This document shows positions 4,562 to 60,055 of a stretch of 64,000 nucleotides of DNA, in pieces. Position numbers and translations under genes: made by a program. The notes below the pieces were generated by a model. That model ran no database searches and was not told the origin of the DNA. It saw only the letters and a list, made by a program, of their open reading frames with translations. The DNA is from Macrostomum lignano (taxonomy: Eukaryota). Positions within the stretch are counted from its first letter, which is position 1; every line of letters starts with the position of its first letter. The stretch lies in contig NIVC01000621.1 of the NCBI GenBank assembly GCA_002269645.1, positions 248,001 to 312,000 on the forward strand. The letters are read 5' to 3'.

Positions 4562-7500
4562 ATGCCAGCTGAACTGCTTCAACGCCTGATTGCTCCTTAC
4601 GAAAATCTGAGCTCAGATTACGTAATACCAGCCGGCAACCGTAACTACCGACTGCAATATTCCCATGTCTACTCCCAGCGGTTGCACTCGATGCGAGCCC
4701 AGTTGGAGGCTCTGGCTCGTGAGCGTTGGCCTTCCCTGCCATTGCGGCGCATCTCAGAAATTGTCACCGGGGAACGGTGCATCGTAGTTGGCACCCTGTT
4801 CAAGGACATGCCATTGAAGCCCAGCATACTTAGCGAGATTGGTGAAGATCAACAGGTAGAGCCACCACCTGTGCCAGAGTGCTGTGTCAGCGATAAAGAC
4901 CGCCTAATCCTGGAGGACGATCTGCAACGAATTCAACTGGTTGGCGACATCGCCAAGGAGCGACTGGTGACTGGCATTGTGCTGGCTGTGCTGGGCAAAG
5001 AGCCGGATGAGGCTAGAGGCCGCTTCCAGGTGCGTGTGCGGTCTTGAAGATGGGGGTGTGGGATTGGGGGAAGATGGGAGTGTGGGATTGGGGTGAATGA
5101 AGATGAGAGTGTCAGATTGGGGTGAATGAAGATGGGAGTGTGGGATTGGGGTGAATGAAGATGGGGGTGTGGGATTGGGGTGAATGAAGATGGGGGTGTG
5201 GGATTGGGATGAATGAAGATGGGGGTGTGGGATTGGGGTGAATGAAGATGAGAGTGTCAGATTGGGGTGAATGAAGATGGGAGTGTGGGATTAGGGTGAT
5301 TGAAGATGAGAGTGTCAGATTGGGGTGAATGAAGATGAGAGTGTCAGATTGGGGTGAATGAAGATGAGAGTGTCAGATTGGGGTGAATGAAGATGAGAGT
5401 GTCAGATTGGGGTGAATGAAGATGGGAGTGTGGGATTGGGGTGAATGAAGATGAGAGTGTCAGATTGGGGTGAATGAAGATGAGAGTGTCAGATTGGGGT
5501 GAATGAAGATGAGAGTATCAGATTGGGGTGAATGAAGATGAGAGTGTCAGATTGGGGTGAATGAAGATGAGAGTGTCAGATTGGGGTGAATGAAAATGGG
5601 AGTGTGGGGTTGGGGTGAATGAAGATGGGAGTGTGGGAATGGGCTGAATGAAAATGAGAGTCTAGGATTGAGGTGAAGATGGGAGTGTGGAATTGGGGTG
5701 AATGAAGATGGGAGTGTGGGATTGGGGTGAAGATGGGGGTGTGGGATTGGGGTGAATGAAGATGGGGGTGTGGGATTGGGGTGAATGAAGATGAGAGTGT
5801 CAGATTGGGGTGAATGAAGATGAGAGTGTCGGATTGGGGTGAATGAATATGAGTGTCAGATTGGGGTGAATGAAGATGAGAGTGTCAGATTGGGGTGAAT
5901 GAAGATGAGAGTGTCAGATTGGGGTGAATGAAGATGAGAGTGTCAGATTGGGGTGAATGAAGATGAGAGTGTCAGATTGGGGTGAATGAAGATGAGAGTG
6001 TCAGATTGGGGTGAATGAAGATGAGAGTGTCAGATTGGGGTGAATGAAGATGAGAGTGTGGGATTGGGGTGAATGAAGATGAAAGTGTCAGATTGGGGTG
6101 AATGAAGATGGGAGTGTCAGATTGGGGTGAAGATGGGAGTGTGGAATTGGGGTGAATGAAGATGGGGGTGTGGGATTGGGGTGAGTGAAGATGGGAGTGT
6201 GGGATTGGGGTGAATAAAGATAGGAGTGTGGGATTGGGATAAAAATAAAGATAAGAGTTAGGCAATCGTAAAAGCTCGTTGGGAACGAGTGTTGTTGAAG
6301 TTCTTAATTTCATGTGCATAATGTGTCACAGTAAAGTACTCAGTGCACTCTGTTGCTAGTCCCGACCCGGTCATCAACACCCAGGTAGAGGAGCACCTGT
6401 TCGCCCAGCCGGCCCCGCAGCCGCAGTGGCTGCCGCTGGAACCGGAGCCCGAGCAGGACATCTGGCTAGCGGTTGTGTCGGGTTTGCACCTGGGTGATCC
6501 AGCGGAGGATGTGCTCAGACTGCGCCTGCTGGTGCAGCGGCTCACCTGTAGTCTGATTCCGTCTGACAGCATGCGACAGTCGGCTGCCAGTGTTGTTCGG
6601 CTGCTGATTGCAGGTGATTTGCTGTGCGTTTGCTACTTATAGTAGGATAGAATAATTGTGTGGACCGCCAGACTGGAGCTCCGCCAGCCTCCCAGAGTGT
6701 CAGTTGCTAGAGCCAGCCTCCCAGATGCTCAGTTGCTGGGCCAGCCTCCCAGATCCTCAGTTGCTAGGCCAGCCTCCCAGATCCTCAGTTGCTGGGCCAG
6801 CCTCTCAGATCCTCAGTTGCTGGGCCAGCCTCCCAGATCCTTAGTTGCTGGGCCAGCCTCCCAGATCCTCAGTTGCTGGGCCAGCCTCCCAGATCCTCAG
6901 TTGCTGGGCCAGCCTCCCAGATCCTCAGTTGCTGGGCCAGCCTCCCTGATCTTCAGTTGCTGGGCCAGCCTCCCAGATTCTCAGTTGCTGGGCCAGCCTC
7001 CCAGATCCTTAGTTGCTAGGCCAGCCTCCCAGATCCTCAGTTGCTAGGCCAGCCTCCCAGATCCTCAGTTGCTGGGCCACCAGCCTCCCAGATCCTCAGT
7101 TGCTGGGCCACCAGCCTCCCAGATCCTCAGTTGCTAGGCCAGCCTCCCAGATCTTCAGTTGCTGTGCTGGGCACTGGATCGTCAAAATCTTCTCTCTCAC
7201 CTGCCGCTCCTATGGTTGCAGTAAAAAATGCAAATTTCTGTTTCCAGAAGAGACTGCTATTAGCGGCAAACATCAAAGGCTATTTTCTGATAGCGCAGGT
7301 TGCAATACCCATTTCCTGAGTCGCAGCCAAGATCACATTGTGCTTGCGCGACCCATTGGAAAGAAGTCAACCTGACAGATATTTAGATGAAATCTATCAG
7401 AATTACTAATGATTGTTACTAATTGCCCCTCCAACTCAGGCAACAGCCTGGCCAAGAGTACTCAGGACCAAGAGTCGCACTCCAGAGCTCTGTACCTGTC

Positions 7501-8128
7501 TAAGAAGGCAGCCGTGACCAGCGCCGCAGGAGTCAGCCGGTTGGACTCGCTGGTGTCCGAGCTGGCGGCCTCGATTCCAGTCGATCTGATGCCGGGCGAA
7601 TTCGATCCCAGCGGTTATTTCTTGCCCCAGCAGCCGCTCCATCACTGCATGCTGCCGCAGTCTGGCCGCTACTCCAGCCTGAATCTCGTCACTAATCCGT
7701 ATCGGTTCCGGCTGGCCGACTGGCACATCCTGGCCACCAGCGGCCAGACAGTGAAAGATGTTAAGAAATTTAGCAACATCCGGGATCCACTGGACCTGAT
7801 GGAGGGCACGCTGCGCTGGCGTCATCTGGCTCCAACAGCGCCGGACACTCTGGGCTGTTTTCCATTCTACGAGTCGGATCCGCTGCTGCTGGACTTCAGC
7901 CCCCACCTGTACATTGCCGGCAATCAGGCTAGCTTTGGGCATCGGCTGGTCAAGGATGCGGCTGGCCAGGAAACTCTGCTGGTATCTGTGCCGGCCTTCG
8001 CTGACACTGGCGAGTGCGCCCTCGTCGGGCTGCGCAGTCGGCGGGTTCGACGGCTGCTACTGTCGGCTGAAGGATTCCACGGTGCAGGTAGACGAGCTGA
8101 TGCCGAGGTTCCAATGGATACTGACTGA
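4562..8128 (+). CDS. POLD2: DNA polymerase delta small subunit; exons 4562-5029, 6385-6613, 7440-8128 (461 aa)
   Basis: Motifs RLQYSHVYSQRL, GTLFKDMPLKPSIL, LILEDDLQRIQL, VDLMPGEFDPSGYFLPQQPLH, HLAPTAPDTLGCFPFY. GT-AG introns with matching phases (0 and 1). An acceptor TTTCAG at 4548 lies 13 nt before the ATG. Confidence 0.95.
5046..6245. repeat. 29-bp minisatellite (~41 copies) filling POLD2 intron 1
   Basis: Unit GATTGGGGTGAATGAAGATGAGAGTGTCA and variants; period 29 read directly. Confidence 0.95.
6684..7163. repeat. 28-bp minisatellite (~17 copies) in POLD2 intron 2
   Basis: Unit CCCAGATCCTCAGTTGCTGGGCCAGCCT. Confidence 0.95.
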
Positions 8129-17446: not shown

Positions 17447-20400
17447 TCAGACGGCTGTGCGGTCTCTGCGTCGCCAAAAGTTGCCGCCCTGCTGACGTCG
17501 CTGAGCTCTCCTGTTGGCCCGTTGGATGTCAGAGCAGGTCAGGCGCTCCCCCCGGCCGCAGGGGCATTGGCAAGCTTGTCTTCTGTCTGCGTCTGTCAGC
17601 CACCCGATTCGCCTGCGCCTGTTGCGCCTGCCTCGGGGCCTCCAGCACTGCGCGTGGATTGTTATTGTTATTATCATAGTCACAGTCATAAATCATTGTT
17701 ATTATCATAGTCACAATCATAAATCATTGTTATTATCATAGTCACAGTCATAAATCATTGTTATTATCATAGTCACAGTCATAAATCATTGTTATTATCA
17801 TAGTCACAGTCATAAATCATTGTTATTATCATAGTCACAGTCATAAATCATTGTTATTATCATAGTCACAGTCATAAATCATTGTTATTATCATAGTCAC
17901 AGTCATAAATCATTGTTATTATCATAGTCACAGTCATAAATCATTGCTATTATCATAGTCACAGTCATAAATCATTGTTATTATCATAGTCACAGTCATA
18001 AATCATTGTTATTATCATAGTCACAGTCATAAATCATTGTTATTATCATAGTCACAGTCATAAATCATTGCTATTATCATAGTCACAGTCATAAATCATT
18101 GCTATTATCATAGTCACAGTCATAAATCATTGCTATTATCATAGTCACAGTCATAAATCATTGTTATTATCATAGTCACAGTCATAAATCATTGTTATTA
18201 TCATAGTCACAGTCATAAATCATTGTTATTATCATAGTCACAGTCATAAATCATTGTTATTATCATAGTCACAGTCATAAATCATTGTTATTATCATAGT
18301 CACAGTCATAAATCATTGTTATCATCATAGTCACAGTCATAAATCATTGTTATTATCATAGTCACAGTCATAAATCATTGTTATTATCATAGTCACAGTC
18401 ATAAATCATTGTTATTATCATAGTCACAGTCATAAATCATTGTTATTATCATAGTCACAGTCATAAATCATTGCTATTATCATAGTCACAGTCATAAATC
18501 ATTGTTATTATCATAGTCACAGTCATAAATCATTGTTATTATCATAGTCACAGTCATAAATCATTGTTATTATCATAGTCAATCATAAATCATTGTTATT
18601 ATCATAGTCAATCATAAATCATTGTTATTATCATAGTCAATCATAAATCATTGTTATTATCATAGTCAATCATAAATCATTGTTATTATCATAGTCAATC
18701 ATAAATCATTGTTATTATCATAGTCACAGTCATAAATCATTGTTATTATCATAGTCAATCATAAATCATTGTCTTAAGCACTTACCCGCTTGATCTTGCA
18801 CTTGTAGTGACTGTTGGAGGGCAGCAGGACGACCTGATTCCACACGTTCTCCAGATAGGAATTATAGCCCACAAAGATCAGCTGCTGATTCAGTTTCAAT
18901 GGCGCACAGGCGCAGCCCGACTTCAAGACGACTATTTGCACGGAGCCGGGATCCAGGATGTGACCGATGGCCTGGCTGCCAGTGTACAGAACTTTTTTAA
19001 TCTCCAGATGGAGAAGCTTCTCGTAGCCGCCGGCGTACGGCCAGCCCAAGCTGCGAGGTCGGCGAATGGGTGCGGCCATCTGCCATCCAGCCCTGGCGAG
19101 CTTCACCTCGGCAGCTGCAATTCAGAAGACGGAACATTTTTAAACTAACTGATGGCAATCATCTTTATTGGGGCTTATTCACGGAAAATTGGTCGGGGGT
19201 TGTCCTTGAAACCGATGAAGGCCAACCCGCAGTGCACAGAGAGTGTACATACCTGAAGATTAGAAAGTCAGGGTGGCTGCACACCCTGTGTGAGCGTGTG
19301 TGAAATGAGTGTGTGCTTGTGTACAGTATTGGCGCAGCGCTGGTTGTAGGACGCTTTCGACGAAGACGTTGCTGCAAGGAACTCCTGAGAATATTACGCT
19401 CGTAGGTTTTTACGACTGCTGGATATCCCGTGCTGCCGTTCCGACTCTCTCCCGCTCTTCGCGTGGCCCTGCGTAGGTCTTAACAGCTGGGACATCTAAA
19501 CCAGGACCTTCTCAGGGCATACGAGCATAGAACCTTTTCTTAGCATCTCTACTTCCAAAGAAAAACCCACAGTAAGGAATGCCCTTTCTGCCTTTTCGGT
19601 GTTGAGAATGCCAACGAGTAGCCTTTACTTCCTCGCCTTTACTCAGGACAGGCTTACCTATCTCGGCCCAATCTTCGACGCTTCCAGGCCCAAGAGTCTC
19701 TGCCAGCTTGTCCGCTACCTTAGGGCTATTGGTCGAGCGACCGTTCACCTCCTGGACTCTCCGGAGGGGGACTGCGCTGTGGACACCGCGGCATCACTGG
19801 ATCTCTCTGTGCGACACTGCAAAAAAAGCTGCCTGTGGTCGCCAGACGTTAGCTTAACCCCCCTCTGCACCCGGATGCCCGGAGCCCTTGCAGCTAATAC
19901 CATGTACAAATTCGCAAAAATTGTAAAGGAAGAATCCATCTTCTAACCACGGCAATGCAACGAAGACTCGAGGGTCGAAAGAGACTAAAGGGTCGGACGC
20001 CTCACCATTGGGTACACTCACCATACGTGAAGTTTCCATCGCGAAAGTCGCTTTTCTTGAACGGATGTCGACGCCTGACAGTCCTAGACCGGGCTCCTGC
20101 ACCTCGCCTCGGTCGCTTAGCAATGTCGGCAATGTACTGCACCTTGTCGCACTGGATTGAGCTTTTCGCCTGACAGATTTCTATAAAAATAGTTCAATTG
20201 CAAAGATACGTTTTTAAGTTGCGGCTTTACATGTAAGTTCAGCTAATTAGCGAAGTTCACGGCCGCCCGCAAGGTGCAATAAAATAGGCCAACTACTCGT
20301 ATATAGGAAGAAAGCACGTGACCTGAAACTTTCCTAGAAGTCAGGGGCTTGCTTGCCCTTTTTTATCTGCGCAGACGATTTGCCCCTTGTTGACCGTCTG

Positions 20401-23640: not shown

Positions 23641-24232
23641 CCAAAAAGGATTCCAGCTAGTTAGTAGTTAATTAGCAACTATAGCGTCAACCAGCAAAAC
23701 CAGGAAACAACTTGCCCACTAAATCTGAAACTTGGCATAATCTGGATCAGCTTCTTATGCGAAGAAACAAATGAACAGCGCCGTAGGTCGGTGCTTGAAA
23801 CTGCACTTCTTGACTAAGGTTGCTGGATTTTTAAGACTTTTTGGATTAGCCATAGCTAGTAAGACAATTAGCGTTGGAAAATTCGTGTGGACCCTATATT
23901 TTGATACCGTGATACCTTCACCAATTTTCTATGTTGCTAAATATAGTTAACTTCACACGAGCGCAGCTCTTATTTTCGGCCCATTTTTCATATTGTACAT
24001 TTAGCTGTTTGGACACACAGCCCAATGGTCAGCAAAGTAAATTTGTGCAACGGCAAGACAGATACTGTAGCTGAGTACTCTCTATCACTCTATAAAATAT
24101 GAGTAGTCGCATCGCAAAGAAACGAGCAACCTCAACACCTGAGCTACACCTCAGAAAGCGCATTAATGCACTAAAAAGACCAGCAAGCCTTTGAAAGACA
24201 CAAATTTCAGAAAACTTTTTAAGCCTACAAGA

Positions 24233-25237
24233 ATGAAACAGCTCAAAAAATGGCGGAAATCTCTGACGGCGAAGTCGGTGAAAACAACGGATACAACACG
24301 TTCAACATGTTCAACAAGTTCGACATGTACAGCACGGACTTCAAAGCCTTATTTTAGTGCCGTCAATCGAAAGCCGCTATTAAAAGACGAGCCGGAGACC
24401 GCCACAGAGTACGCAACCGTCAGCGAACTGGTCACTCTGTACTTGTACGCGAGGCCTCTAAATCCACTGAAATCCATTTTGATCAAAAGCATCGAGCGAA
24501 TCGAGCAGCCAGTGCTCGATGCCCGATTTCACGCCGCTCGCGAACTCCTGCTTGTCGACTCGGAGCCACGGTTGCTCATTCACGATGCCAGCCTGAATGA
24601 CAGAGAGAAAGTCTTCAATGAAGCTGGTTTCACCGCAACTGAAGGTCCCTACGGTTGGGGAATTTACTTCTTAACTGAGAACAACAGCAAGCGACCCAGC
24701 TACAGCACTCAGAGTGGCGACCAGACACTTCTGCTGGGCGAAGTCCTCCTGGGCAAAGAGAAACTCTGCGACCAGCCCGATCCGGGGCTCAACCTCTCGA
24801 AGATTCAAGACGAGGGCTGCGACTCGGTGCTAGCAAACAACAGCCTTGCCGGCTTCGGCACATGCGTTGTTTACCGACACGAGCAGGCCACTCCAAGGTA
24901 CCTGGTGACGTTTGAAGTGACGAATAATGATTTTGGCCGACTGAGTGACCATTTCTACGCGGCTGTGAGGTTTTTGCTTATGGCGGTGCTGTCCGTGCCA
25001 TTTGCAGTTTTTGTCGCTCTGAAGCTGGAAAACGTTCGAGAGAGGATTCTAGATATTTTTAAATCAGAACTTTGTTGGCTTATCTTCATCTTTGTCCTGG
25101 CTTGTGCAGCAGCTATAGGACTTATATTTATTTTCTTACTGGATTGGCTATTGAGTATCGGTTGGATCATTCAACCCTTTCTGGTGATCGTCTGTCTCGT
25201 GACGATCCCGGCTTTTTGGAGGGGCATCGGACAGTGA
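24233..25237 (+). CDS. PARP-type ADP-ribosyltransferase-like protein with three C-terminal hydrophobic helices (PARP-A, 334 aa, single exon)
   Basis: LLIHDA, GPYGWGIYF, LLLGEVLLGK, GCDSV, VVYRHEQATPRYLV. The catalytic Glu position is T/C. Three hydrophobic segments lie in the last ~90 aa. Confidence 0.8.
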   Translation: MKQLKKWRKSLTAKSVKTTDTTRSTCSTSSTCTARTSKPYFSAVNRKPLLKDEPETATEYATVSELVTLYLYARPLNPLKSILIKSIERIEQPVLDARFHAARELLLVDSEPRLLIHDASLNDREKVFNEAGFTATEGPYGWGIYFLTENNSKRPSYSTQSGDQTLLLGEVLLGKEKLCDQPDPGLNLSKIQDEGCDSVLANNSLAGFGTCVVYRHEQATPRYLVTFEVTNNDFGRLSDHFYAAVRFLLMAVLSVPFAVFVALKLENVRERILDIFKSELCWLIFIFVLACAAAIGLIFIFLLDWLLSIGWIIQPFLVIVCLVTIPAFWRGIGQ

Positions 25238-27542: not shown

Positions 27543-28290
27543 TGCCAAATCACTCCCTGACACACCGGGTCACTCTCTGACGTGCCAAATCACTCTCTGA
27601 CTCATTCTGTCACTCTCTGACGTGCTAAATCACTCCTTGAAACACCGGGTCACTCTCTGACTTGCCAAATCACTTTCTGACTCATTGTGTCACTCTCTAA
27701 CATGCAAAATCACTCCCTGACACACCAGATCACTCTCTGACGTGCCAAATCACTTTCTGACTCATTGTGTCACTCTCTAACATGCAAAATCACTCCCTGA
27801 CACACCAGATCACTTTCTGACGTGCCAAATCACTTTCTGACTCATTGTGTCACTCTCTGACATGCAAAATTACTCCCTGACTCATTGTGTCACTCTCTGA
27901 CATGCAAAATTACTCCCTGACTCATTGTGTCACTCTCTGACGTGCAAAATCACTCCCTGGCACACTGGGTCACTCTCTGACGTGCAAAATCACTCCCTGA
28001 CACACAGGGTCACTCTCTGACGTGCTAAATCACTCCCTGACACACAGGGTCCCTCTTTGACGTGAAAAATCACTCCCTGGCACACTGGGTCACTCTTTGA
28101 CGTTCCAAATCATTTTATGACACACTGTATCACTTTTTGACATGCCAAATCACTCTCTGACTCATTGTGTCACTCTCTAACGTGCCTCCTGACTGACACA
28201 CTGGGTCACTTTGACATGCAAAATCATTTTCTGACACACTGGGTCACTATTTGACATGCCAATTTTCTGATTCATATGGTCACTCTGACA
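27543..28290. repeat. ~39-40-bp degenerate minisatellite made of two related half-units
   Basis: Unit approx. CACTCTCTGACGTGCCAAATCACTCCCTGACACACCGGGT. Confidence 0.9.
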
Positions 28291-28644: not shown

Positions 28645-28808
28645 ATCTCACCCATTACCGAGTCTATCTCACCCATTACCGAATCTATCTCACCCATTAC
28701 CGAATCTATCTATATATACTAGCGTATCTCACCCATTACCGAATCTATCTCACCCATAACCGAATCTATCTATACGAGCGTATCTCACCCATTACAGAAT
28801 CTACCTCA
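28645..28808. repeat. 21-bp tandem repeat
   Basis: ATCTCACCCATTACCGAATCT repeated with short interruptions. Confidence 0.85.
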
Positions 28809-29122
28809 CATATGACTGATTCAACTTCTCGATCGCTGCTTGTTATTCTGGCATTCGGTATCCCAGCTGGCTTTTCGATGAATTTCCATTACAAATCCTT
28901 GAAAACGTAAAAGCACCAACAATTTAATGAATCCATTCCAACAATTAAAATCGAAGATTTGGTTTATAATAATATAATATAAGAATAAGCCTAGTAGTAT
29001 ATTTGTGAATGTCCGCGATGTTGAGCAGTCACTTTGGTCTGCAATTTTTACAAGTAAAGCAGTGTTCAGCTGATTTAGCTATCAATTTCCAATGCGATCA
29101 GTCAGAAGACGCTCGGGTTTGT

Positions 29123-29380
29123 TCAGCCCAAGCGGAAGTAGGAACGAAGGTAGCGGCGCTCGCCCCCACGCCTGCGATACGTAATCCGGAACCACCTGCT
29201 AAACCACTTCAATTCCGGATGGGCGTCTTCGTTGGAATCATCCAGCTCCGGTTGGTCCATGTCGGCCAGGTCGTCGTTGGGCCCCTCGTCCAGGTCGTCG
29301 TTGTCTTCGCGCTCAGCCGGGTTGGCGTAGACCGCCAGCGCCACGCAGAGGAGGAGACCGAGGGCGAACTGCCACTTCAT
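29123..29380 (-). CDS. Secreted peptide precursor: signal peptide, acidic propiece, cationic aromatic C-terminal peptide (antimicrobial-peptide-like, 85 aa)
   Basis: MKWQFALGLLLCVALAVYA signal; 17 D/E in the spacer; KWFSRWFRITYRRRGGERRYLRSYFRLG-stop. Upstream TATAAAT at 29486-29480; possible ATTAAA polyA signal at 28928-28923. Confidence 0.8.
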   Translation of the reverse strand: MKWQFALGLLLCVALAVYANPAEREDNDDLDEGPNDDLADMDQPELDDSNEDAHPELKWFSRWFRITYRRRGGERRYLRSYFRLG

Positions 29381-29479
29381 GACTGCTGCTGTTGTTGAAT
29401 TTTGAGCTCAGAGAGATTCGATTTGCAGAGCCGATTCTCGACTTGGGTCTTGAGCTGTTGGAAGCTCAAGGGGGCTTGA

Positions 29480-29486
29480 ATTTATA
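29480..29486 (-). promoter_or_regulatory. Candidate TATA box of the peptide precursor gene
   Basis: TATAAAT on the minus strand, 100 nt upstream of the ATG. Confidence 0.5.
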
Positions 29487-30210: not shown

Positions 30211-33200
30211 TTGCCTGGAAGTACGCCAGCATCGCCAACTAAAGGAGTTGGTAAAACGGTTTCGAGCGACAAAGCACCACCGCTTGCTATCTCGTCGAAA
30301 TCAGTCCAAGCGACAAAGTCGGCAACAGCGACAGCGCAGAACCCAAGCGCACAAGTATCGAGAGGACAGCAAGTTGACATCGAAAAACTCGATGAAAGTT
30401 CGAACTTCCAGAGGTGGTTGGACCGATTCACACTGTGCAGCGAACTCAACGGCTGGCAGGACGACACGAAAAACAAGCTGCTGCTGATGAAGCTCAGCAC
30501 CAAGCTGTACGACGCATTGGCAGATCGAGCCGCTCCCAAGAAGCCGGGAGAAAAGAGCTTCGATGAACTGACCAAACTACTGGCCAGCATCCTGGAACCA
30601 AAGACGTTCGTCATGGCTGAGAGATTCAATTTCCAGCATATCACTCGCACGGCATCAATGAGCATTCGTGAGTATGCACAGCAACTCTGCATGCAGGCAG
30701 ACAAGCGTCAGTTTGGCCTATCCAGAGATGAGAGACTGAGAGATCAGCTCGTATTCGGTTTGAATGACAAGGTGGCCATCAGCAAGTTATTGGAGCAGGA
30801 CTTCAGCACTCTCACGTTTGAGACAGCTATCAACATCGCTGAGGCGCACCAGAACCTATCACAAACGCAAATACTAAAGGGTTGCACCAGTCAGCCGCAG
30901 TCTTCTGAAGTAATGAAAATTTCAGCATCGGTGGCCAGAGGCTCCCACTCTACAAGTTCCAAGTGTGGCAGATGTGGCATAATGCATGGCTCCAATGGAG
31001 GGTGTCCTGCGAAAGGAAAAACGTGCAACAAATGTGGCATGCAAAACCACTTCGCAACAGTTTGCAAAACGAAATCAACTGGTTTTGGCAAAGGCCGAAA
31101 ATCGTTCAAAAGCCCGTCAGCATCTGGTCAATTTAGGCGAGCTGCAGTGTGGCCAAGGACCACAAGCTTTGTAGATGCAAGCGAAGCTGAACAGGAGGAT
31201 TGTTTTCACATTCGACATCCCGTTGATAGCTACACCGTGCCTGTTAGGCTCAGACACACGAGCGGGTCGATGCTTAGCGTGAACGCACAAATCGATACTG
31301 GGGCAGGAGTTTCGGTAATGTCAAAAACGATCTGGAAACGATTGGGTTGTCCAAAGCTGACACCTACAGACACTGTTCTGACAACATACGCTGATACGCA
31401 GATAAAGGTCTTTGGAACACACGACACTGAGTTGGAGTACAATGACGAGTTCATTCCAATCACATTCTTCATTGTGGAATCGCAGAGGAACTTTGTTCTG
31501 GTTGGCCAAGACAAGCTCAATTTCACGCTAAACGCTGTAGACAACAGCTGCACATCGGCAACCCAGTCATGCGAATTTCCACCAGTAACTCTTAAGATCA
31601 AGGAAGGAACCACTCCAATTCATTGCAAACCCAGGCCGCTACCCTTCGCACTCAGACAGGGAGTCAAGGATGAAATCGATCGGTTGCTTGAAGAAGACAC
31701 CATCAAGCCCGTCAAGTTCAGTGAATGGGCCTCACCAATTGTCGTGGTCAAGAAACGTTCTGGAAAGCTCAGACTTTGCGTCGACTACAAGGTGACAATC
31801 AATTCTCATCTTATCAACGATTCATATCCGATGCCTGCACCTGACGAAGTGATTGCAGCTGCTGCTGGCAGCCGGATATACACTCGTCTGGACCTAGAGA
31901 AAGCTTATCACCAGATCCCACTAGATGAAGCTTCCAAAGAGCTGACAGTAATTTCAACACCATTTGGGATGTTCGCTTTCAACAAGCTTCCGTTCGGAGT
32001 GAAAACAGCACCTGCGATCTTCCAGCGGTACATTAGCCAAGTCCTACAAGGAATTCCTGGCGTCATTGCCTACGTAGACGACATATTGATATGCGGCAAA
32101 GGCGTAGAACAATTGGCAGTTCGTGAGACGGAAGTATTGCATCGACTAAACCAGCAAGGATTGAATATCAACACGGCAAAAAGTGAATTCCGCAAGACTT
32201 CGATCAAGTTTCTAGGCTACTTATTGGAAGGAGATCAGCTCAAGCCGGACCCAGCCAAAGTGAAGGCAATCCAGGACATGACACCACCGCAGAACGTTGG
32301 CGAGCTTAAATCCTTCCTGGGTCTCGTAAATTTTAGCGGCAAGTTCATCAGAAACCTAGCTGCACTGACCAAGCCTCTCAATCGACTAAGAAAGAAAAAT
32401 GAGGACTTCGTGTGGACAAAGGAGTGTCAAATAGCATTTGACGAAATCAAGGTCACTCTGATCAATCGAGTCTTCAAATATTTGATCCGGAGAATCCCAT
32501 TGAACTGGAATGCGACAGTTCTCAGCGAGCTCTGGGCGGAGTGTTGACACAAAGCGGTCAAGTCGTGCTGTACATGAGCAAGACTCTGTCTGACGCCGAA
32601 ACAAAATATTCGCAAATAGAGCGTGAAGGCCTGGCACTGGTTTGGTGCATTCAAAGATGCCATCGGTTCTTGTATGGCCGGAGGTTCACACTGATAACTG
32701 ATCACCGGCCCCTCACATACATATTCGCGCCAGACAAACAGCTGCCCACCAGAGTTTCAGCTCGACTACAACGATGGGTAATTATACTAGCTGCTTATGA
32801 CTATGACATACAGTATCGACCATCAAAGCTAATGCTGTCGGATGCGCTATCTCGACTGGTGCCCGCTAAGCCGAATGCACAGACAGCATCGATCGGACTC
32901 CTCGAAGCTGACAACCCGGGAGTAATTCAGCTGGATCGCATTGCACACGCAACCAGAGAGGACCCGGAGTTCAGATGCCTGGGCGCAGCCATAATTAACA
33001 ATAATCTATTTGACGACCCACACCTACTCAGCTACTCAAAGGTTCAAGATGAGCTAACTGTCAATGATGGAATTATTTACAGAATGAATAGAATTGTATT
33101 GCCTCGTGTCCTGAGAGAAACTGCCCTGGCAGCTGTACACTCAACGCACCTTGGGTAGAAAAGTCAAAGTCGATTTTGAGGAAACTGTTCTGGTGGCAAC

Positions 33201-38644: not shown

Positions 38645-41160
38645 ATGTTGGAATCAGTTTTCAAGCTGGCCAAATTAGTTGAAGAGCTTCAGTCGGAACC
38701 GGACCAGCATTCGTTTTTTGACTTTCTACATGATAGCCAATGCTGGATTGAGCGGACCCTGTCCGGTGTTTTGGACCAGTCGATTCCCCTGGAGACGCAG
38801 GAGCAACAAATGAAACTTATGCACGAGCTTAAAAAAAGGCAAAGTCTAGTAATTAAAGTTCAGTCAATGGGAGGTAAGCTCGCGGAAGAAAATTTCGGGA
38901 ACAAAGATTTGTGCGCGGAAATCAGAAAGCAAATTCGTGACATCGGCCAAAAAATGTCCGACTTGAACGAGGTTGTTCAACAAAAAATGGTGAGTAGTTT
39001 TAATTTTGTTAATATAGCATAAATGCAATACCATGACTTGTTTGTCTTCATATCCTACTAGCGAATATCACGGTTGAGCACTTACCCGCAATGGTGATCC
39101 GGTCTGCATACTTTCCGAAGTCTGTCTCTGACCGCTGGAAAATTTGTCTTGAGGTAGCTCACTACGAGAATAGGTAACAGCGGACCGGGAAAGGCTGTAT
39201 GCTAGCTGTATAATAAGACAGGTCTCTAGTTTGGTATTCTCAACCCCAGAATTTGGCCGCAGGGAGCTTCTGCCAGTGCGAAAGTGGGTTCTATTGACGA
39301 GCAGGATGGGTGGCCCCATGATTTCGGTACACTTTCGGACGCTTCGAAAATACGTCTGCTGACAAAAGCTGGGATCTTAGGAAGCAAGGTGGGCCCTCGT
39401 ATGGAGGGTGCCCGCAGACCTAAGCAGCGGCAATATCATACCAAGTCTTCCGGAGCCTCTCAACACTTTTGGACTACCTGGGTTTCCGAATAGTTCCTGA
39501 ACTTCCTTGAATTCAGTAGAATGTAATAGTACGTACATTCAGCTGTGTATAGAGGCTTGTCAGCATAAAAGCACCCCCCCCCTACAAAATTTCTCGCTTC
39601 CTGCATGTCAATGCGATCCAGTCTCAGCAGTGTCCCTTTTATTGGCTACGAATTCGAGATTGAATATGAAAAAACACTTGTTGGCAGGTAAGTCCAGTGC
39701 CATTTCAAGTCGGAAATCCGATTTCGAAAGAGCTGGTTTGTTTAGCTAGTTCTCATGGATTGTTGGTGGCGGGTTAGCTTAATCTCAGGATTATCTAATC
39801 TCCATCGTTGGAATTCTGACCGCTTGTCTCTCGCTGTCTTCTCTTATGGGGCTGACCAGCTGATATATTTTTATTGCTATTATTTTAACTGGACAGAGTT
39901 TTTGCATTCAAGCATTCACGAAACTGTCTGCAGGGCGCTGGTTACAATCAATTGGCCGAAGCAGCGTCAATTGGTCCCGCAAAGCTATGCACCCCTGATC
40001 AATCACTTCTGCAGCAGTATTGGCAGAAATTTCGCGACTGTCGATGCTGGATATCTGCCCTTCATTACAACATGACAAGACACTGTCAGATAGACGATTC
40101 TCAGCCTTCACCAGAGCATAAGGAGGTTCGTAGACAAAGGATCCTTCAAAAGCTACGCAAAGAGATCGATAGCAGATCGTGGACAGTGGAAAATGTCCGC
40201 ACACTGGGTTACAAACTGATAGAGGAAAATCGAGGAAATTCAGTTTTACGCACGGATGTCAAGGACCAGTTAGGCATCTTGATTGAAGAGTTTAACAGTC
40301 TTCAGGACATGGCTGTGCACCTGTGGGTAAGGTGATCTGTAAACATTTTCCAAAGGGATTTGTTAATAAAAGATACGAGCGCATGTTCAATTTGAAAGGA
40401 TTTGCAGTTGCCAACAATTCATTTTTAGAACGACGAGTTAAGAACGTTTCGCTGCGGGCACACCGAACGGCTCGACCGCGAATCATCTTTACGTCGAATA
40501 AGTGACCAGTTCTGTTCCAGCTGTTGGCCTCTGGCCAGCCAGGTGCAGGCAAACAAACTTTGTCAGGATGGTGACAGAATCAGACGTACACCAGTCACTG
40601 CTGACAATGAAGACACTGCGGTCGAGTACTATAAGATAAGCGACCGAGTTCTGCGATACGCATTAAAGGAGCACAATATTAAGTTGGAAATTCGTTCCAT
40701 TGAGAAAATAAAAAATCCAGTCTTGGATAAGAAACTTTTCAATGTATACAACGAAATGCACAAGAAGGACTGTGTGCCGGAGTTGCTTTTCCACGGAACT
40801 ACAAGAAAAAATGCTGAAATGATCATTCAGAATGGATTCAAGGTTGGCAATAGCGGAATGTTCGGTGCTGGCATATACTTCGCAACCGATAGCACCAAGA
40901 GCGCTCAGTATTGCAGGGGAACAGGTATTAAATCGCTGCTGCTCTGCGATGTCTTGCTGGGTAAAACAATGGTGTGCGATGCTCCAAAGACCAGTCTTAC
41001 CTTAGAGCAGGTTAGAACAGCTGGATACGATTCCGTGTTTGCCAGAAGAAATTCGAAGAAAAAAGGAGGAGTGTTGAATGACGAGTACATCGTGTACAGA
41101 GCGGAGCAAGCCACCCCGAGATATCTAATCAAGTTTGGGTCAGAGTGCTCGATTCTGTGA
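38645..41160 (+). CDS. Two spectrin-like repeats + PARP catalytic domain with intact H-Y-E (PARP-B); exons 38645-38989 (frame open from acceptor at 38504), 39934-40326, 40543-41160 (~451 aa)
   Basis: LLFHGT, GMFGAGIYFA, SAQY, LLCDVLLGK, NDEYIVY. Upstream exons each show a spectrin-like F-x6-W-I helix plus heptad helices. Donors GTGAGT and GTAAGG, CAG acceptors, all phase 0. Confidence 0.8.
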
Positions 41161-53936: not shown

Positions 53937-54731
53937 TCAGTACACCTTGACAAACTTGGCCCAGTTCGGGTCGGTCTCGATGGCGTCGCCGACGCTCGAG
54001 TCAGCGAAGTCCAGCATGCGGCAGGCGCCGCTGGCCCGGTTGAACAGGACGGCCCGGCACTCCCAGCGCTGCACGCAGAGCCACAGGCAGCGAAACTCCG
54101 AGCTCACCGAGGCGTCAGTGTAGCAGTAGACAGGACTGATGTTGCCCAGCCTCAGGAACTCCGCTCGCTCCAGGTACTTGCTGTTCGGCGTCGCGATCGG
54201 CTGGCAGACAAACTGTCTCTCCAGATAGGCGCCTTGGTCTCGCAAGCCATCAAAGCTGATGGCTAAAAAATCATCGTCTACCGAGTAACTGTTCGGCAAC
54301 CCACTTTTCCAGTCGCTGTCATTCAAAGTCGGAAACAGCGAGCCGTTGGCGAATCTCCAGCTGCTGCGAGACGTGCCCGCCTCAACCAGGAGATCCGTCA
54401 CTCCGATATAGTAGTGATCAATCCAGTGATTGACAGCTCGGATGGCAGTCAGGTCCATCAGCAGCTCTCCGCCGATGTCCAGGCACAGTCTGGCTGCGTC
54501 GCACCACTTAGAGGTGCTGTTTCCAAGGTAGACGCAGCTGCCCAGCCTGTCAATGAACGGAGCGACACAGGCGCCAGTGGCGAGGGCCGCCAGTCCGCCA
54601 CCAGTGCCAACTGAAACAGCCGATTCGGTAACGTAATCGCGTACATAGAGCTTAGTCAATGGATTAGCTAGAGAGAAAATTGAAAGCTGAACCCATGCAG
54701 TAATGCATTTATGGACTGCAGCCGCAGCCAA
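53937..54731 (-). CDS. C-type lectin-like domain + C-terminal PAN/apple domain protein; 5' end uncertain
   Basis: C..CVYL..W..A...C..IGGEL, YYIG, W..GLPN, RQFVCQ; then CLWLCVQRWECRAVLFNRASGAC. The ORF starts at TTG, so an upstream exon is likely. Confidence 0.75.
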   Translation of the reverse strand: MAAAAVHKCITAWVQLSIFSLANPLTKLYVRDYVTESAVSVGTGGGLAALATGACVAPFIDRLGSCVYLGNSTSKWCDAARLCLDIGGELLMDLTAIRAVNHWIDHYYIGVTDLLVEAGTSRSSWRFANGSLFPTLNDSDWKSGLPNSYSVDDDFLAISFDGLRDQGAYLERQFVCQPIATPNSKYLERAEFLRLGNISPVYCYTDASVSSEFRCLWLCVQRWECRAVLFNRASGACRMLDFADSSVGDAIETDPNWAKFVKVY

Positions 54732-55092: not shown

Positions 55093-56088
<996 letters not shown>

Positions 56089-57459: not shown

Positions 57460-58214
57460 TCAACTGCGTTTAGTCTTTTTACGCTTACGGAATGACCTCA
57501 TTATGTCCAATACCAGATCCACAATCAATGTAATCAGGCCTGGAAGACTTGTCGCTACTCCTTCGCACTGCACTGCTTTGTCGAGCATCACGCCTGTGGA
57601 TCTACTTGACCTGAACGTCACCAAATACCTGGGCGACACCTGCTCAGCACGGTACACAACGTACGTGTACTCATCGTCTCTGTCGATGGCGTTGGCGCTT
57701 TGCTTTTTCTTATTTTGTCCAGACAGCACAGAGTCGCAGCCCATGGCTTTCAACTTGGCAGAGTCGAGCGACCGGTTGGGGGTGTCGCAGACCTTCGGCT
57801 TGCCCAGAGCCACCTCACACACCAGCTGGCAGCGGCGTCCATTGTTGCAGGCCTTTATTTCGTTAATCTTGTAGTCATTGGATACAAAGTAGATCCCGTG
57901 ACCGAACGGGCCCTTGCTATACTGATCGACCGTGAAGCCGTTCTGTATGATTGCTTCAGCGTTTTGTTTTGTTGTGTAGAAGCTGAGCAGCGTTGACCGG
58001 TTGTCAGTCTCGGGCATCTCTCGATTTTTAGAGGCTGTGAGCCTGCGGTCCAGCTCATTATTGTCTATTCTCGCCACCGAATAGATTTTATCTCGAATTG
58101 GCTTTCCCACTTTCTTTAGCACTGTTGAGTACTCATTCGTCATGTCTTCGTCATCGTTTGGAAGAAAGGTCCGAGAGACACCGGGCGCATCCTGCATGAT
58201 TAGGGTCAGTTTAG
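57460..58214 (-). CDS. Degenerate PARP-like domain with a hydrophobic then polybasic C-terminus (PARP-C); probable terminal exon
   Basis: LLSFYTT (His lost), AIIQNGF, GPFGHGIYF, VCEVALGK, GCDSV, VVYRAEQVSPRYLV; tail LPGLITLIVDLVLDIMRSFRKRKKTKRS. Acceptor TATCAG at 58215 (phase 1); in-frame ATG at 58197. Confidence 0.75.
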
Positions 58215-58240
58215 CTGATAATTGTCTTTTGTTGCAGGCC

Positions 58241-58466
58241 GCCACTGTCTCTTGGAGGGTACCACTGTATCTTGGAGGGTGCCACTGTCTCTTGGAGGGT
58301 GCCACTGTCTCTTGGAGGGTGCCACTGTATCTTGGAGGGTGCCACTGTATCTTGGAGGGTGCCGCTGTCTCTTGGAGGGTGCCACTGTATCTTGAAGGGC
58401 GCCACTGTATCTTGGAGGGTGCCACTGTCTCTTGGAGGTGCCACTGTCTCTTGGAGGTGCCACTGT
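58241..58466. repeat. 20-bp minisatellite upstream of the PARP-C exon
   Basis: Unit GCCACTGTATCTTGGAGGGT. Confidence 0.9.
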
Positions 58467-59900: not shown

Positions 59901-60055
59901 CTAGCAGGCATTTTCGCACGTTTTCAAGCGATGCAGCATCTTTGTTTTCCTTGAGCAGCCTCATCAGTAGTGACTCAAGCTCGAATGCCTTCCGCTCTGC
60001 CTCGGGACTCAGCTGGTTAAACTGCTTTTTACAGTCACCTCCGAAGAGGTAAGAA
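59901..60055 (-). other. Candidate coding exon (helical peptide), possibly upstream of PARP-C
   Basis: Open stretch LFGGDCKKQFNQLSPEAERKAFELESLLMRLLKENKDAASLENVRKCLL; its ELESLLMRLL motif resembles the adjacent repeat unit. Boundaries not established. Confidence 0.3.

What the first reader, a model, noticed from the sequence alone, without database searches (positions are those of the whole stretch)
29123..29486. Candidate novel cysteine-free antimicrobial peptide precursor
Seen: signal peptide; ~38-aa spacer with 17 acidic residues; 28-aa tail KWFSRWFRITYRRRGGERRYLRSYFRLG with 9 Arg, 1 Lys, 1 Glu (net about +9), 8 aromatics, no Cys and a terminal Gly; TATA box upstream. Established: this signal/anionic propiece/cationic tail layout is used by AMPs such as Hydra arminins, and C-terminal Gly is the amidation donor. 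Inference: the strands around the central GG could form an arenicin-like beta-hairpin without a disulfide. I do not recognise the family.
Basis: partly seen in the sequence, partly recalled or inferred. Interest (0 to 1): 0.8.

Follow-up and report, generated by a model that had tools for sequence, protein, structure and literature searches.

The report
Flatworm secreted cationic peptide gene family
This is a real, small, intron-free gene of the flatworm Macrostomum lignano, one of at least 26 related genes that attach the same export signal and acidic spacer to very different positively charged end-peptides. It is most likely an untested antimicrobial-type defence peptide family, and a few of its relatives have already been flagged by a computational screen.

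Summary
An 85-codon ORF (29380..29123) encodes a 19-aa signal peptide, a 38-aa spacer with 17 Asp/Glu (net -16) and a 28-aa tail (9 Arg, 1 Lys, 1 Glu, 8 aromatics, terminal Gly). A TATAAA lies 106 nt upstream of the ATG.

The window is Macrostomum lignano (assembly Mlig_3_7). The exact protein is a GenBank entry on three contigs.

It belongs to a family not described as such: at least 26 protein clusters, all M. lignano apart from one contig of unknown species. They share a conserved signal (MKWQxALGLLLC), an acidic propiece and an invariant Lys (often KK/KKK) at the boundary. Their cationic tails vary greatly (helical, alternating Arg/His-hydrophobic, Pro-Arg-rich, Arg/Tyr/His-rich) and mostly end in Gly or Gly-Lys, the usual amidation signals.

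Within the subfamily, signal-peptide DNA is 96-98% identical, the propiece about 70%, and the tails cannot be aligned.

Irvine et al. 2023 (S5 File) list three paralog entries as computational "AMP-like peptides". They were filtered out and never tested.

The AMP-precursor reading is therefore plausible but unproven (about 0.5). A signalling-peptide role is the main rival. The proposed beta-hairpin is not supported: periodicity and AlphaFold2 both favour helix-GG-helix.

The parts
29481..29486 (-). TATA box (TATAAA within GGGTCTATAAAT), 106 nt upstream of the ATG
   Evidence: Sequence read. The 12-mer GGGTCTATAAAT is invariant between the window gene and the Arg/Tyr/His-tail paralogs, while the surrounding promoter is only 46-58% identical. 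Every family locus examined has [TC]ATAAAT 87-124 nt upstream of its ATG.
29381..29456 (-). Inferred 5' UTR (start site assumed about 30 nt downstream of the TATA box; not mapped)
   Evidence: Inference from the TATA position. It is 58% identical to the paralog 5' UTR, with a conserved CAGCAGCAG just before the ATG.
29123..29380 (-). Complete single-exon CDS, 85 codons plus TGA; prepropeptide identical to a GenBank M. lignano hypothetical protein
   Evidence: The gene is called at exactly 258 nt on two sister contigs and translates to the query. GC3 is 0.81.
29324..29380 (-). Signal peptide, residues 1-19 (MKWQFALGLLLCVALAVYA); predicted cleavage Ala19|Asn20
   Evidence: It has the n/h/c-region layout with Val at -3 and Ala at -1 (sequence). 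The same 19 residues in paralog BOX15_Mlig025063g1 passed the SignalP 4.1 filter of PMC10414684. DNA is 96-98% identical to the paralogs, with synonymous changes only.
29210..29323 (-). Anionic propiece, residues 20-57 (17 D/E of 38, net -16)
   Evidence: It is 70% identical in DNA to the paralogs, with omega 0.40-0.47. Predicted disordered (pLDDT about 49).
29207..29209 (-). Lys58, the invariant boundary residue of the family (K, KK or KKK in paralogs); proposed propeptide-processing site
   Evidence: It is one of only four invariant columns in the 24-sequence alignment. Cleavage here is inferred.
29126..29209 (-). Cationic tail, residues 58-85: KWFSRWFRITYRRRGGERRYLRSYFRLG (net +9). Predicted amphipathic helix 58-69/71, GG hinge (72-73, nt 29162-29167), second helix to about residue 83.
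   Evidence: Composition. Helical hydrophobic moments. AlphaFold2: helix 55-72 in the full-length model (pLDDT about 60-67); helices 58-69 and 71-83 in the 31-mer (pLDDT 73.5).
29126..29128 (-). C-terminal Gly85, candidate amide donor, followed by the stop at 29123-29125
   Evidence: Terminal G or GK occurs in 20 of 24 aligned family members, about 9 of 12 mutually unalignable tail classes. Amidation itself is inferred from the established role of peptidylglycine alpha-amidating monooxygenase.

Best explanation
The locus is an expressed, intron-free gene of Macrostomum lignano. It encodes an 85-aa prepropeptide of a large gene family seen so far only in M. lignano (plus one contig of unknown species).

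Proposed mechanism:
1. The signal peptide (1-19) directs the protein into the secretory pathway and is removed after Ala19.
2. The strongly anionic propiece (20-57, net -16) masks the charge of the cationic tail during synthesis and storage.
3. A processing protease cuts at the invariant Lys58 (KK/KKK in most paralogs).
4. The terminal Gly85 is converted to a C-terminal amide.
5. The product is a peptide of about 26-27 residues and about +9/+10 charge, (K)WFSRWFRITYRRRGGERRYLRSYFRL-NH2. It folds on membranes into two amphipathic helices joined by a Gly-Gly hinge and acts as a membrane-active host-defence (antimicrobial-type) effector.

The family reuses one conserved signal/propiece cassette to deliver many different cationic peptides, as amphibian preprodermaseptins and Hydra arminins do.

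Shown: gene, family, architecture, conservation pattern.
Inferred: cleavage sites, amidation, helical fold, antimicrobial function.
For: Real gene:
- The exact protein is in GenBank on three Mlig_3_7 contigs.
- That annotation is built from RNA-seq transcript assemblies (PMC5730564).
- GC3 is 0.81 against 0.50-0.68 in neighbouring ORFs.
- A conserved TATA box is present.

Family:
- An exhaustive HMMER profile search of 1.84 billion proteins found only M. lignano relatives.
- Profile searches then raised this to at least 26 clusters.

Architecture shared by all members: signal MKWQxALGLLLC, acidic propiece, invariant Lys, cationic tail, terminal G/GK in 20 of 24.

Evolutionary pattern typical of effector peptide families:
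- Signal omega is 0-0.12 even at dS of about 1-2.
- Propiece omega is 0.40-0.47.
- The tails cannot be aligned and differ by indels and repeats.

Tail classes are all classic AMP-like chemistries: amphipathic helix, Trp/Arg-rich, Pro-Arg repeats, a two-Cys loop, and alternating Arg-hydrophobic strands.

Window peptide: muH 0.73-0.81 at helical angles; AF2 gives helix-kink-helix.

Independent prediction: paralogs BOX15_Mlig008283g1 and Mlig025063g1 (group 116; 90.9% and 72.7% of predictors), Mlig024774g1/g2 (group 142; 100%) and Mlig001477g4 (81.8%) are listed as flatworm AMP-like peptides in S5 File of PMC10414684.

Bipartite charge, paralog families and taxon restriction are the stated hallmarks of Hydra AMPs (PMC10945409).
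Against: - No functional, peptidomic or expression-site data exist for any family member. None of the M. lignano supplementary tables I could search lists the family.
- AMP predictors over-call any short cationic peptide.
- The window protein itself was not found in the stored (truncated) part of the S5 File.
- The layout (acidic spacer, basic cleavage site, terminal Gly) is equally that of amidated neuropeptide precursors.
- Many paralog tails are only 6-10 residues (FIHIHF-G, GFHVHFH-G), short for classical AMPs.
- The tail contains internal RRR and RR sites that could be cut into smaller products.
- Hydrophobic-moment significance is modest (p about 0.04-0.07 per half). AF2 confidence is low to moderate, and AF2 is biased towards helices for short peptides.
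Confidence: 0.5

Rival explanations
1. Amidated signalling peptide (neuropeptide, hormone or pheromone) precursor. The prohormone is cut at Lys58 and at the internal RRR/RR sites, giving for example YLRSYFRL-NH2, which acts on a receptor. The short paralog products (FVRVRVRL-NH2, IFRVRVRI-NH2, FIHIHF-NH2) would be related ligands.
For: - The layout is a canonical prohormone: signal, acidic spacer, K/KK/KKK site, and a terminal G or GK amidation signal in 20 of 24 members.
- Several members share a -R[VI/F]RLG-like ending, including the window peptide (-FRLG) and the VRLG/IRLG paralogs.
- Internal dibasic and tribasic sites are present in the window tail (sequence).
- In Hydra, some neuropeptides are also antimicrobial, so the two roles need not exclude each other (PMC10945409).
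Against: - The mature regions are the least conserved part of the family. What is kept is a physicochemical pattern (basic/hydrophobic alternation, high charge), not a receptor-type motif.
- Tails of 27-48 residues with +9 to +20 charge are atypical for neuropeptides.
- No relatives were found in any other flatworm proteome in an exhaustive search, whereas flatworm neuropeptide families are usually shared across orders (my own knowledge).
- At least 26 diverging paralog clusters in one species is unusual for a ligand. Literature searches gave no match to a described flatworm neuropeptide.
Confidence: 0.2
2. Secreted material, reproductive or glandular protein. This would be an Arg/aromatic-rich sticky or coacervating component of adhesive, rhabdite/mucus, eggshell or seminal secretions, in which the acidic and basic halves neutralise each other for dense granule packing or self-assembly.
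For: - The closest paralogs have Arg/Tyr/His-rich low-complexity tails (20 R, 13 aromatic and 7 His of 48). This resembles small cationic Tyr/Arg-rich adhesive proteins such as mussel mfp-3 (my own knowledge, a lead only).
- Short paralog tails with strictly alternating hydrophobic/Arg or His residues have strong beta-strand periodicity (muH at 180 degrees above 1, p < 0.03), a pattern that favours self-assembly.
- Rapid evolution and lineage restriction are also typical of reproductive proteins in Macrostomum (PMC7336406 title and abstract).
Against: - No family ID appears in the supplementary tables of the M. lignano adhesion study (PMC6410801) or the reproduction-related RNA-seq study (PMC7336406). 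ID systems may differ, so this is weak evidence.
- The conserved basic processing site and the terminal amidation Gly point to a released small peptide rather than a structural protein.
- The window tail is not low-complexity and is amphipathic-helical.
Confidence: 0.12
3. One reading: the tail forms an arenicin-like beta-hairpin around the central Gly-Gly, without a disulfide.
For: A central GG could make a turn. The C-terminal half has a non-significant secondary moment at 170-180 degrees (0.60-0.63; p about 0.2). Other family members do have beta-type alternation.
Against: - Both halves peak at 95-105 degrees. The N-half has muH 0.33 at 170 degrees, below the shuffle mean.
- AF2 predicts only helices.
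- There is no Cys to staple a hairpin, no BRICHOS domain or any Pfam hit, and no PDB sequence relative.
Confidence: 0.08
4. A chance ORF or pseudogene with no function.
For: The ORF is short, lies in a repeat-rich region and has an LTR-retrotransposon pol about 700 bp upstream.
Against: - The CDS is identical in three genomic copies whose 10-kb surroundings are 96.8-99.8% identical.
- Paralogs show purifying selection on the signal peptide.
- There is a strong GC3 signal and a conserved TATA box.
- The gene is annotated from transcript evidence.
Confidence: 0.02

Closest known systems
fAMP-LP groups 116 and 142 and 'ungrouped 544' of Irvine et al. 2023 (PLoS Pathog, PMC10414684, S5 File): BOX15_Mlig008283g1/Mlig025063g1, Mlig024774g1/g2, Mlig001477g4
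   Same: These are true paralogs of the window gene in the same genome. They have the same or nearly the same signal peptide, an acidic propiece, the boundary Lys and a cationic tail. They were predicted to be AMP-like by 72.7-100% of the prediction tools.
   Different: They were listed only as separate small groups, filtered out as 'Same genome' or 'Ungrouped', and never discussed, united into a family or tested. The predicted mature peptides there follow furin-type sites inside the tails. The window protein was not found in the stored part of that file, and its tail sequence is unrelated to theirs.
Hydra arminins (and Hydra AMP families generally)
   Same: They share a signal peptide plus a bipartite precursor with strongly segregated negative and positive charge, the active peptide at the cationic C-terminal end, multigene families and restriction to one genus (PMC10945409). 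Arminins are Cys-free in the active part and carry a terminal Gly (my own knowledge).
   Different: There is no sequence homology: nothing outside M. lignano came up in the exhaustive profile search. The phylum differs. Arminin activity is demonstrated experimentally, whereas nothing here is tested.
Amphibian preprodermaseptin-type AMP precursors
   Same: They have a highly conserved signal peptide and acidic propiece, a basic processing site, a hypervariable C-terminal cationic peptide and frequent Gly amidation. The signal is conserved even at the DNA level while the mature region diverges (my own knowledge for frogs; the equivalent pattern here is).
   Different: They are vertebrate skin-gland genes with introns and a Lys-Arg site. 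Here the gene is intron-free with a single Lys (KK/KKK in paralogs). There is no homology.
Flatworm amidated neuropeptide precursors (FMRFamide-like peptides, npp genes)
   Same: They share the signal, acidic spacers, basic cleavage sites and a C-terminal Gly amide donor.
   Different: Neuropeptide precursors keep the mature peptide motif and are shared between flatworm orders (my own knowledge). Here the mature part is the most variable and the family was found in one species only. No match to a described flatworm neuropeptide was found.
Arenicins (Arenicola marina)
   Same: They are Arg/aromatic-rich cationic peptides at the C-terminal end of a longer precursor.
   Different: Arenicins are 21-residue beta-hairpins stapled by a disulfide and are released from a BRICHOS-domain precursor (my own knowledge). 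The window tail has no Cys, helical periodicity, no strands in AF2 and no Pfam domain.
Mytilus myticalins and Mesocestoides corti mesco peptides (linear cationic AMPs found by genome mining)
   Same: They are small secreted precursors with a highly cationic linear stretch, found by screening for a signal peptide plus a cationic window (PMC11546468). Myticalins are Arg/Pro/Tyr/Trp-rich multigene peptides (my own knowledge).
   Different: In myticalins the cationic peptide precedes an anionic C-terminal extension (my own knowledge). There is no homology to either.

Membership tests
M. lignano MKWQ-signal prepropeptide family (defined here) | Conserved N-terminal signal M[KR]WQxxLGLLLC | tested here: met
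   The window protein has MKWQFALGLLLC. In the 24-sequence alignment M1, L7 and L10 are invariant, and W3, Q4, G8, L9 and L11 are at least 90% conserved.
M. lignano MKWQ-signal prepropeptide family (defined here) | Acidic propiece of about 30-40 residues, followed by an invariant Lys and then a cationic tail | tested here: met
   The propiece has net charge -16. K58 is invariant. The tail has net charge +9.
M. lignano MKWQ-signal prepropeptide family (defined here) | Significant sequence similarity to other members | tested here: met
   E = 1.6e-19 to P0002 in the single-sequence search. The profile gives E-values of 1e-34 to 6e-7 for 25 further clusters.
M. lignano MKWQ-signal prepropeptide family (defined here) | Compact intron-free gene with a [TC]ATAAAT box about 90-125 nt upstream of the ATG and GC3-rich codons | tested here: met
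   The box lies at -106 in the window and at -87 to -124 in six other loci. GC3 is 0.77-0.91 in all of them.
Gene-encoded cationic antimicrobial peptide precursor (signal / anionic propiece / cationic C-terminal peptide type) | Cleavable signal peptide | tested here: met
   It has the n/h/c regions and a Val-x-Ala cleavage motif. The identical 19-residue signal in paralog Mlig025063g1 passed the SignalP 4.1 filter in PMC10414684. SignalP was not run here.
Gene-encoded cationic antimicrobial peptide precursor (signal / anionic propiece / cationic C-terminal peptide type) | Cationic, amphipathic mature peptide | tested here: met
   Net charge is +9. muH is 0.73-0.81 at helical angles, though only modestly above shuffles (p 0.04-0.07). 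AF2 gives helices.
Gene-encoded cationic antimicrobial peptide precursor (signal / anionic propiece / cationic C-terminal peptide type) | Release of the mature peptide by proteolysis, and C-terminal amidation | not testable with these tools
   The only evidence is the conserved Lys/KK/KKK boundary and the terminal G/GK. Peptidomics is needed.
Gene-encoded cationic antimicrobial peptide precursor (signal / anionic propiece / cationic C-terminal peptide type) | Microbicidal activity of the mature peptide | not testable with these tools
Only in-silico AMP calls exist, and only for paralogs.
Gene-encoded cationic antimicrobial peptide precursor (signal / anionic propiece / cationic C-terminal peptide type) | Expression in barrier or secretory tissue, constitutive at a high level or induced by microbes | not tested
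   No expression table that I could search lists the family. Transcript existence is inferred from the RNA-seq-based annotation.
Hydra arminin family (homology) | Detectable sequence homology to arminins | tested here: not met
   The exhaustive HMMER profile search returned only M. lignano proteins and one chance archaeal hit.
Arenicin-like beta-hairpin AMPs | Two antiparallel strands with beta-type amphipathic alternation | tested here: not met
   Moments at 160-180 degrees do not exceed shuffles, and the peaks are at 95-105 degrees. AF2 gives no strands.
Arenicin-like beta-hairpin AMPs | Disulfide staple and a BRICHOS-domain precursor | tested here: not met
   There is no Cys in residues 20-85 and no Pfam domain.
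Amidated neuropeptide precursor | Basic cleavage sites flanking the peptide, and a Gly amide donor | tested here: met
   K58, internal RRR (69-71) and RR (75-76), and terminal G85 are present (sequence).
Amidated neuropeptide precursor | Mature peptide motif conserved among paralogs or orthologs, with the precursor conserved across related taxa | tested here: not met
   The tails cannot be aligned between subfamilies. No relatives were found outside M. lignano apart from one unassigned Logan contig.
Amidated neuropeptide precursor | Neuronal expression and a cognate receptor | not testable with these tools
   No localisation data were available.

The most novel reading that the evidence does not exclude
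The window gene belongs to what would be the first host-defence peptide family of a free-living flatworm. In this reading a single conserved signal/propiece/Lys cassette works as a 'delivery chassis' for a combinatorial library of amidated peptides with different physical modes. These modes are helix-hinge-helix (this gene), Trp/Arg-rich, Pro-Arg repeat, Arg/Tyr/His low-complexity, and very short strictly alternating Arg- or His-hydrophobic strands (FVRVRVRL-NH2, FIHIHF-NH2, GFHVHFH-NH2). The short strands might act by metal- or pH-dependent self-assembly rather than by classical membrane lysis.
Probability: 0.12. Interest if true: 0.75.

Novelty: new member of a known kind. Interest (0 to 1): 0.5.

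Why it matters
Effector molecules of flatworm innate immunity are poorly known. The only large in-silico helminth survey discarded species-restricted candidates, and it tested just four flatworm peptides, calling one of them the first AMP identified from a cestode (PMC10414684).

Macrostomum lignano is a transgenic and RNAi-tractable model (PMC5730564). A family of at least 26 clusters of candidate defence peptides, with a recognisable shared cassette, could therefore be tested directly: where it is expressed, whether microbes induce it, and whether it shapes the microbiome.

The family is also a clean natural example of a 'conserved export cassette, hypervariable payload', evolved independently of frogs, cone snails and Hydra. 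It supplies a set of short Cys-free amidated peptide templates.

If the peptides turn out to be signalling molecules instead, the family would be an unusually large lineage-specific peptide-ligand expansion.

Tried and rejected
- Pfam scans of the window protein and eight paralogs found nothing meaningful. A borderline Lock_Gag1-like hit in P0020 comes from its duplicated propiece.
- A PDB sequence search with the tail gave only a chance hit at E = 2.
- A paralog inside the window: the tblastn hit at 38571-38521 has no ATG and is chance. The gene is a singleton in this window.
- The archaeal hit P0008 in the profile search is a chance match from acidic repeats.
- Searching family gene IDs in full texts found nothing.
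- Searching family gene IDs in the supplements of five M. lignano studies found no family member: germline/neoblast PMC5816591, ageing PMC5946080, intestine/feeding PMC12732829, reproduction RNA-seq PMC7336406 and bioadhesion PMC6410801. One unrelated hit was to a different gene of the same transcriptional-unit number. No tissue assignment was therefore possible.
- Literature searches for M. lignano AMPs, neuropeptide precursors and -RLamide flatworm peptides found no description of this family.
- Fold search was not run, because the full-length model is low-confidence (pLDDT 59.7) and the peptide is too small for meaningful matches.
- Positive selection on the tail could not be tested, because the tails cannot be aligned.
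- The source species of the one non-NCBI relative (Logan run SRR31628392, L006) could not be determined.
Full report
**1. The observation**

The ORF is on the minus strand of the window. The ATG is at 29380, TGA at 29125-29123, and the product is 85 aa:

MKWQFALGLLLCVALAVYA | NPAEREDNDDLDEGPNDDLADMDQPELDDSNEDAHPEL | KWFSRWFRITYRRRGGERRYLRSYFRLG

- The spacer is 38 aa with 17 Asp/Glu (net -16).
- The tail is 28 aa with 9 Arg, 1 Lys, 1 Glu (net +9), 8 aromatic residues, no Cys and a terminal Gly.
- The only Cys is in the signal peptide.
- TATAAA lies at 29486-29481, 106 nt upstream of the ATG.
- The CDS is 62% GC with GC3 0.81. The flanks are 39-46% GC, and neighbouring ORFs have GC3 0.50-0.68.

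A longer antisense ORF (29009..29398, +) has no support.

**2. Where it comes from, and whether it is a gene**

The exact 85-aa protein is a GenBank/UniRef entry of the flatworm Macrostomum lignano (assembly GCA_002269645.1, Mlig_3_7). It is present on three contigs.
- The gene call spans exactly 258 nt, so the coding region is a single exon.
- The window region is 99.8% identical over 10 kb to one sister contig and about 97-98% to the other. This fits the duplicated genome of this species.
- The CDS is identical in all three copies.
- The Mlig_3_7 annotation was built from RNA-seq transcript assemblies with experimentally defined ends (PMC5730564). A deposited gene model therefore implies a transcript, although I could not inspect the reads.

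**3. It is one member of a large family that has not been described as such**

A single-sequence search found paralogs with the same signal and propiece but an unrelated Arg/Tyr/His-rich tail (P0002-P0004).

An exhaustive HMMER profile search of 1.84 billion representative proteins returned only M. lignano proteins, plus one chance archaeal hit. Two further profile searches raised the family to at least 26 clusters at 90% identity. All are 'hypothetical protein BOX15_Mlig...'. The one exception is a 929-nt Logan contig from run SRR31628392, whose organism I could not determine.

In a 24-sequence alignment the only invariant columns are M1, L7, L10 and Lys58, the first residue of the tail. W3, Q4, G8, L9, L11, A14, L15 and P21 are at least 90% conserved.

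The tails differ radically:
- KWRRRRRFRWRKAIRVAGKVAKAVL
- KWFVRWRRRRWRFRFFRG
- KKWRIKSACKIFRRLLHLARKCYAKKG
- KKFLRVRLPRVRMPRVRLPRVRLPRLRVRFRWSKK
- KKWRIRFRRIRIRWRRVYRVVRTAYRIYRHLPFPGK
- Many short peptides after KK/KKK: FVRVRVRLG, IFRVRVRIG, FVRVHVRFG, FIHIHFG, GFHVHFHG, FHLHLPGK

Twenty of 24 sequences end in Gly or Gly-Lys. That is about 9 of 12 mutually unalignable tail classes. Against a 7% Gly background this gives a binomial probability of 7e-9, though shared ancestry means it is better read as conservation.

Some paralogs sit in pairs 3-4 kb apart. The window gene is a singleton, and a weak hit at 38571 is chance.

**4. Evolutionary pattern**

The window gene was compared with its nearest paralogs, region by region.

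| Region | DNA identity |
|---|---|
| 12-nt TATA element | 12/12 |
| Signal-peptide codons | 96-98% |
| 5' UTR | 58% |
| Propiece | 70% |
| Tail | 55% or less (effectively unaligned) |
| Flanks | 42-47% |

Nei-Gojobori estimates:
- The signal has 0 non-synonymous and 1-2 synonymous changes within the subfamily.
- Against distant paralogs, whose synonymous sites are saturated (dS 0.9-1.9), signal omega is 0.04-0.12.
- Propiece omega is 0.40-0.47.

The signal is therefore under strong purifying selection. The propiece keeps its composition, and the tail is replaced wholesale through indels and repeats.

Every locus examined has a [TC]ATAAAT box 87-124 nt upstream of the ATG and GC3 of 0.77-0.91.

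**5. Structure of the window peptide**

Eisenberg hydrophobic moments peak at helical periodicity. KWFSRWFRITY gives 0.73 at 100 degrees and ERRYLRSYFRL gives 0.78-0.81 at 95-100 degrees. These are modestly above shuffles (p about 0.04-0.07). Beta angles do not exceed shuffles.

AlphaFold2 gave two results.
- With the family alignment, the model is low-confidence (mean pLDDT 59.7). It has a disordered propiece, a helix over residues 55-72 and no strands.
- Residues 55-85 folded alone give helices 58-69 and 71-83 at pLDDT 73.5.

AF2 is biased towards helices for short peptides, so this is supporting evidence and not decisive. Interestingly, the short VRVRV-type paralogs do have strong beta periodicity (muH above 1 at 180 degrees, p < 0.03).

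**6. What the literature holds**

No paper in the searchable library names this family.

S5 File of Irvine et al. 2023 (PMC10414684) is the raw output of a pipeline using SignalP, ProP and a panel of AMP predictors. It lists three sets of paralogs as 'flatworm AMP-like peptides':
- BOX15_Mlig008283g1 and Mlig025063g1 (group 116; 90.9% and 72.7% of tools)
- Mlig024774g1/g2 (group 142; 100%)
- Mlig001477g4 (ungrouped; 81.8%)

Groups confined to one genome were removed before prioritisation, so these entries were neither discussed nor tested. The window protein was not found in the stored part of that file, which is truncated.

Hydra AMP families are described as bipartite in charge, multi-paralog and genus-restricted, and some are produced by neurons (PMC10945409).

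**7. Most likely mechanism**

The best-supported reading is a prepropeptide of the regulated secretory pathway.
1. The signal is removed after Ala19.
2. The anionic propiece neutralises the tail during storage.
3. Cleavage occurs at the conserved Lys58.
4. Gly85 is converted to an amide.
5. A peptide of about 26-27 residues and +9/+10 charge, with a helix-hinge-helix fold, is released and is active on membranes.

Steps 1-5 are inferred from conserved sequence features. Only the architecture, the family and the selection pattern are shown. I give the host-defence (AMP-type) function about 0.5.

The main rival is an amidated signalling peptide, at about 0.2. It uses exactly the same processing logic and is favoured by the very short paralog products and the recurring -R-x-R-[LIF]-Gly endings. 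Against it are the hypervariability of the mature part, the extreme charge and length of several tails, the number of paralogs, and the absence from other flatworm proteomes.

A material, adhesive or reproductive secretion role is at about 0.12. It is suggested by the Arg/Tyr/His-rich and strictly alternating tails.

A chance ORF is very unlikely, at about 0.02.

**8. Comparison and membership**

The locus works like the arminin and preprodermaseptin type of AMP precursor, but it is not homologous to either. It is not arenicin-like: it has no disulfide, no BRICHOS domain and no beta periodicity. Its only true relatives are the M. lignano paralogs. See the membership table for the features tested.

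**9. Novelty and verdict**

The gene is deposited but uncharacterised, and three paralog entries sit unnoticed in a supplementary list of AMP candidates. What is new here:
- These entries and more than 20 further clusters form one family with a shared cassette, an invariant boundary Lys, a conserved amidation Gly and a common promoter layout.
- The window gene is a member of that family, with a distinct helix-GG-helix tail.

This makes it a new member, and a new family, of a well-known kind of precursor. Interest is moderate (0.5). The finding is not surprising in principle. It is useful because flatworm immune effectors are scarcely known and M. lignano is experimentally tractable.

**10. Context noticed in the window**

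- An LTR-retrotransposon pol (protease, RT, RNase H) lies at 30211-33158, about 700 bp upstream of the promoter. There are further RT fragments elsewhere.
- Three PARP-catalytic-domain ORFs are present.
- There is a DNA polymerase subunit B exon and a PAN-domain ORF.
- There are many minisatellites, including a 21-nt array about 320 nt downstream of the stop.

Noticed in passing
window 30211-33158 (+): LTR-retrotransposon pol region: DUF7083, gag-aspartyl protease and RVT_1 in a 778-aa ORF, then RT_RNaseH in the next ORF. It starts about 700 bp upstream of the peptide gene's TATA box. The region is shared at 99.8% with sister contig L002 and partly with L001 (alignment starts at about 2.9 kb upstream of the ATG).
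   Followed up: partly
window 24191-25237 (+), 40543-41160 (+), 57460-58425 (-): Three ORFs with PARP catalytic domains (Pfam E = 1.5e-6, 3.7e-27 and 4.1e-11) lie within 35 kb, flanking the peptide gene. A PARP gene is also called downstream of the gene on both sister contigs. This may be a local PARP-domain gene cluster; its function was not examined.
   Followed up: no
window 28645-28809, 27543-28262, 5070-6238, 6683-7164, 17664-18772, 55145-56033, 59574-59905, 63708-64000: The window has a dense set of minisatellites: 21-nt x6 about 320 nt downstream of the peptide gene's stop, 40/80-nt x18, 29-nt x41, 28-nt x17, 31-nt x36, (CTGT)x222 and 24-nt arrays. They account for the GC- and AT-skew spikes in the composition profile.
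   Followed up: no
window 29324-29380 versus L003/L004/L005 5001-5057: Synonymous sites of the signal-peptide codons are much more conserved between subfamily paralogs (dS 0.07-0.16) than those of the adjacent propiece (dS 0.65-0.76) or the 5' UTR (58% identity). This suggests gene conversion or RNA-level constraint on the signal-coding segment.
   Followed up: partly
L007 5656-5895 (-) and 10001-10243 (+); L008 4673-4912 (-) and 10001-10243 (+); L009 7191-7385 (+) and 10001-10195 (+): Other family members occur as local pairs: inverted duplicates encoding identical proteins about 4-5 kb apart, and a tandem pair 2.8 kb apart whose tails differ (KKFVRARVRVRLG versus KKFVRVRARIRLG). In some GenBank models one copy is fused to an upstream ORF (127-139 aa proteins such as P0005, P0011, P0026).
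   Followed up: partly
L006 (Logan SRR31628392 contig, 929 nt), gene at 541-813: This is the only family member from outside the NCBI M. lignano assembly. It has MRWQLALGLLLC, an acidic propiece and a Pro-Arg repeat tail (LPRVRMPRVRLPRVRLPRLRV...), with a CATAAAT box at -124. The source organism of the run could not be determined, so it is unknown whether the family extends beyond M. lignano.
   Followed up: partly
L003 8752-8910 and L004 8748-8906: A weak tblastn match (41% identity over 61 aa to the propiece and tail of P0004) lies about 3.5 kb downstream of the Arg/Tyr/His-tail paralog. It could be a decayed tandem copy or a low-complexity chance match.
   Followed up: no
window 7409-8128 (+), 53937-54731 (-): One ORF has a DNA polymerase alpha/epsilon subunit B domain (E = 1.5e-39) and another has a PAN domain (E = 1.3e-4). 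They are probably exons of ordinary host genes.
   Followed up: no
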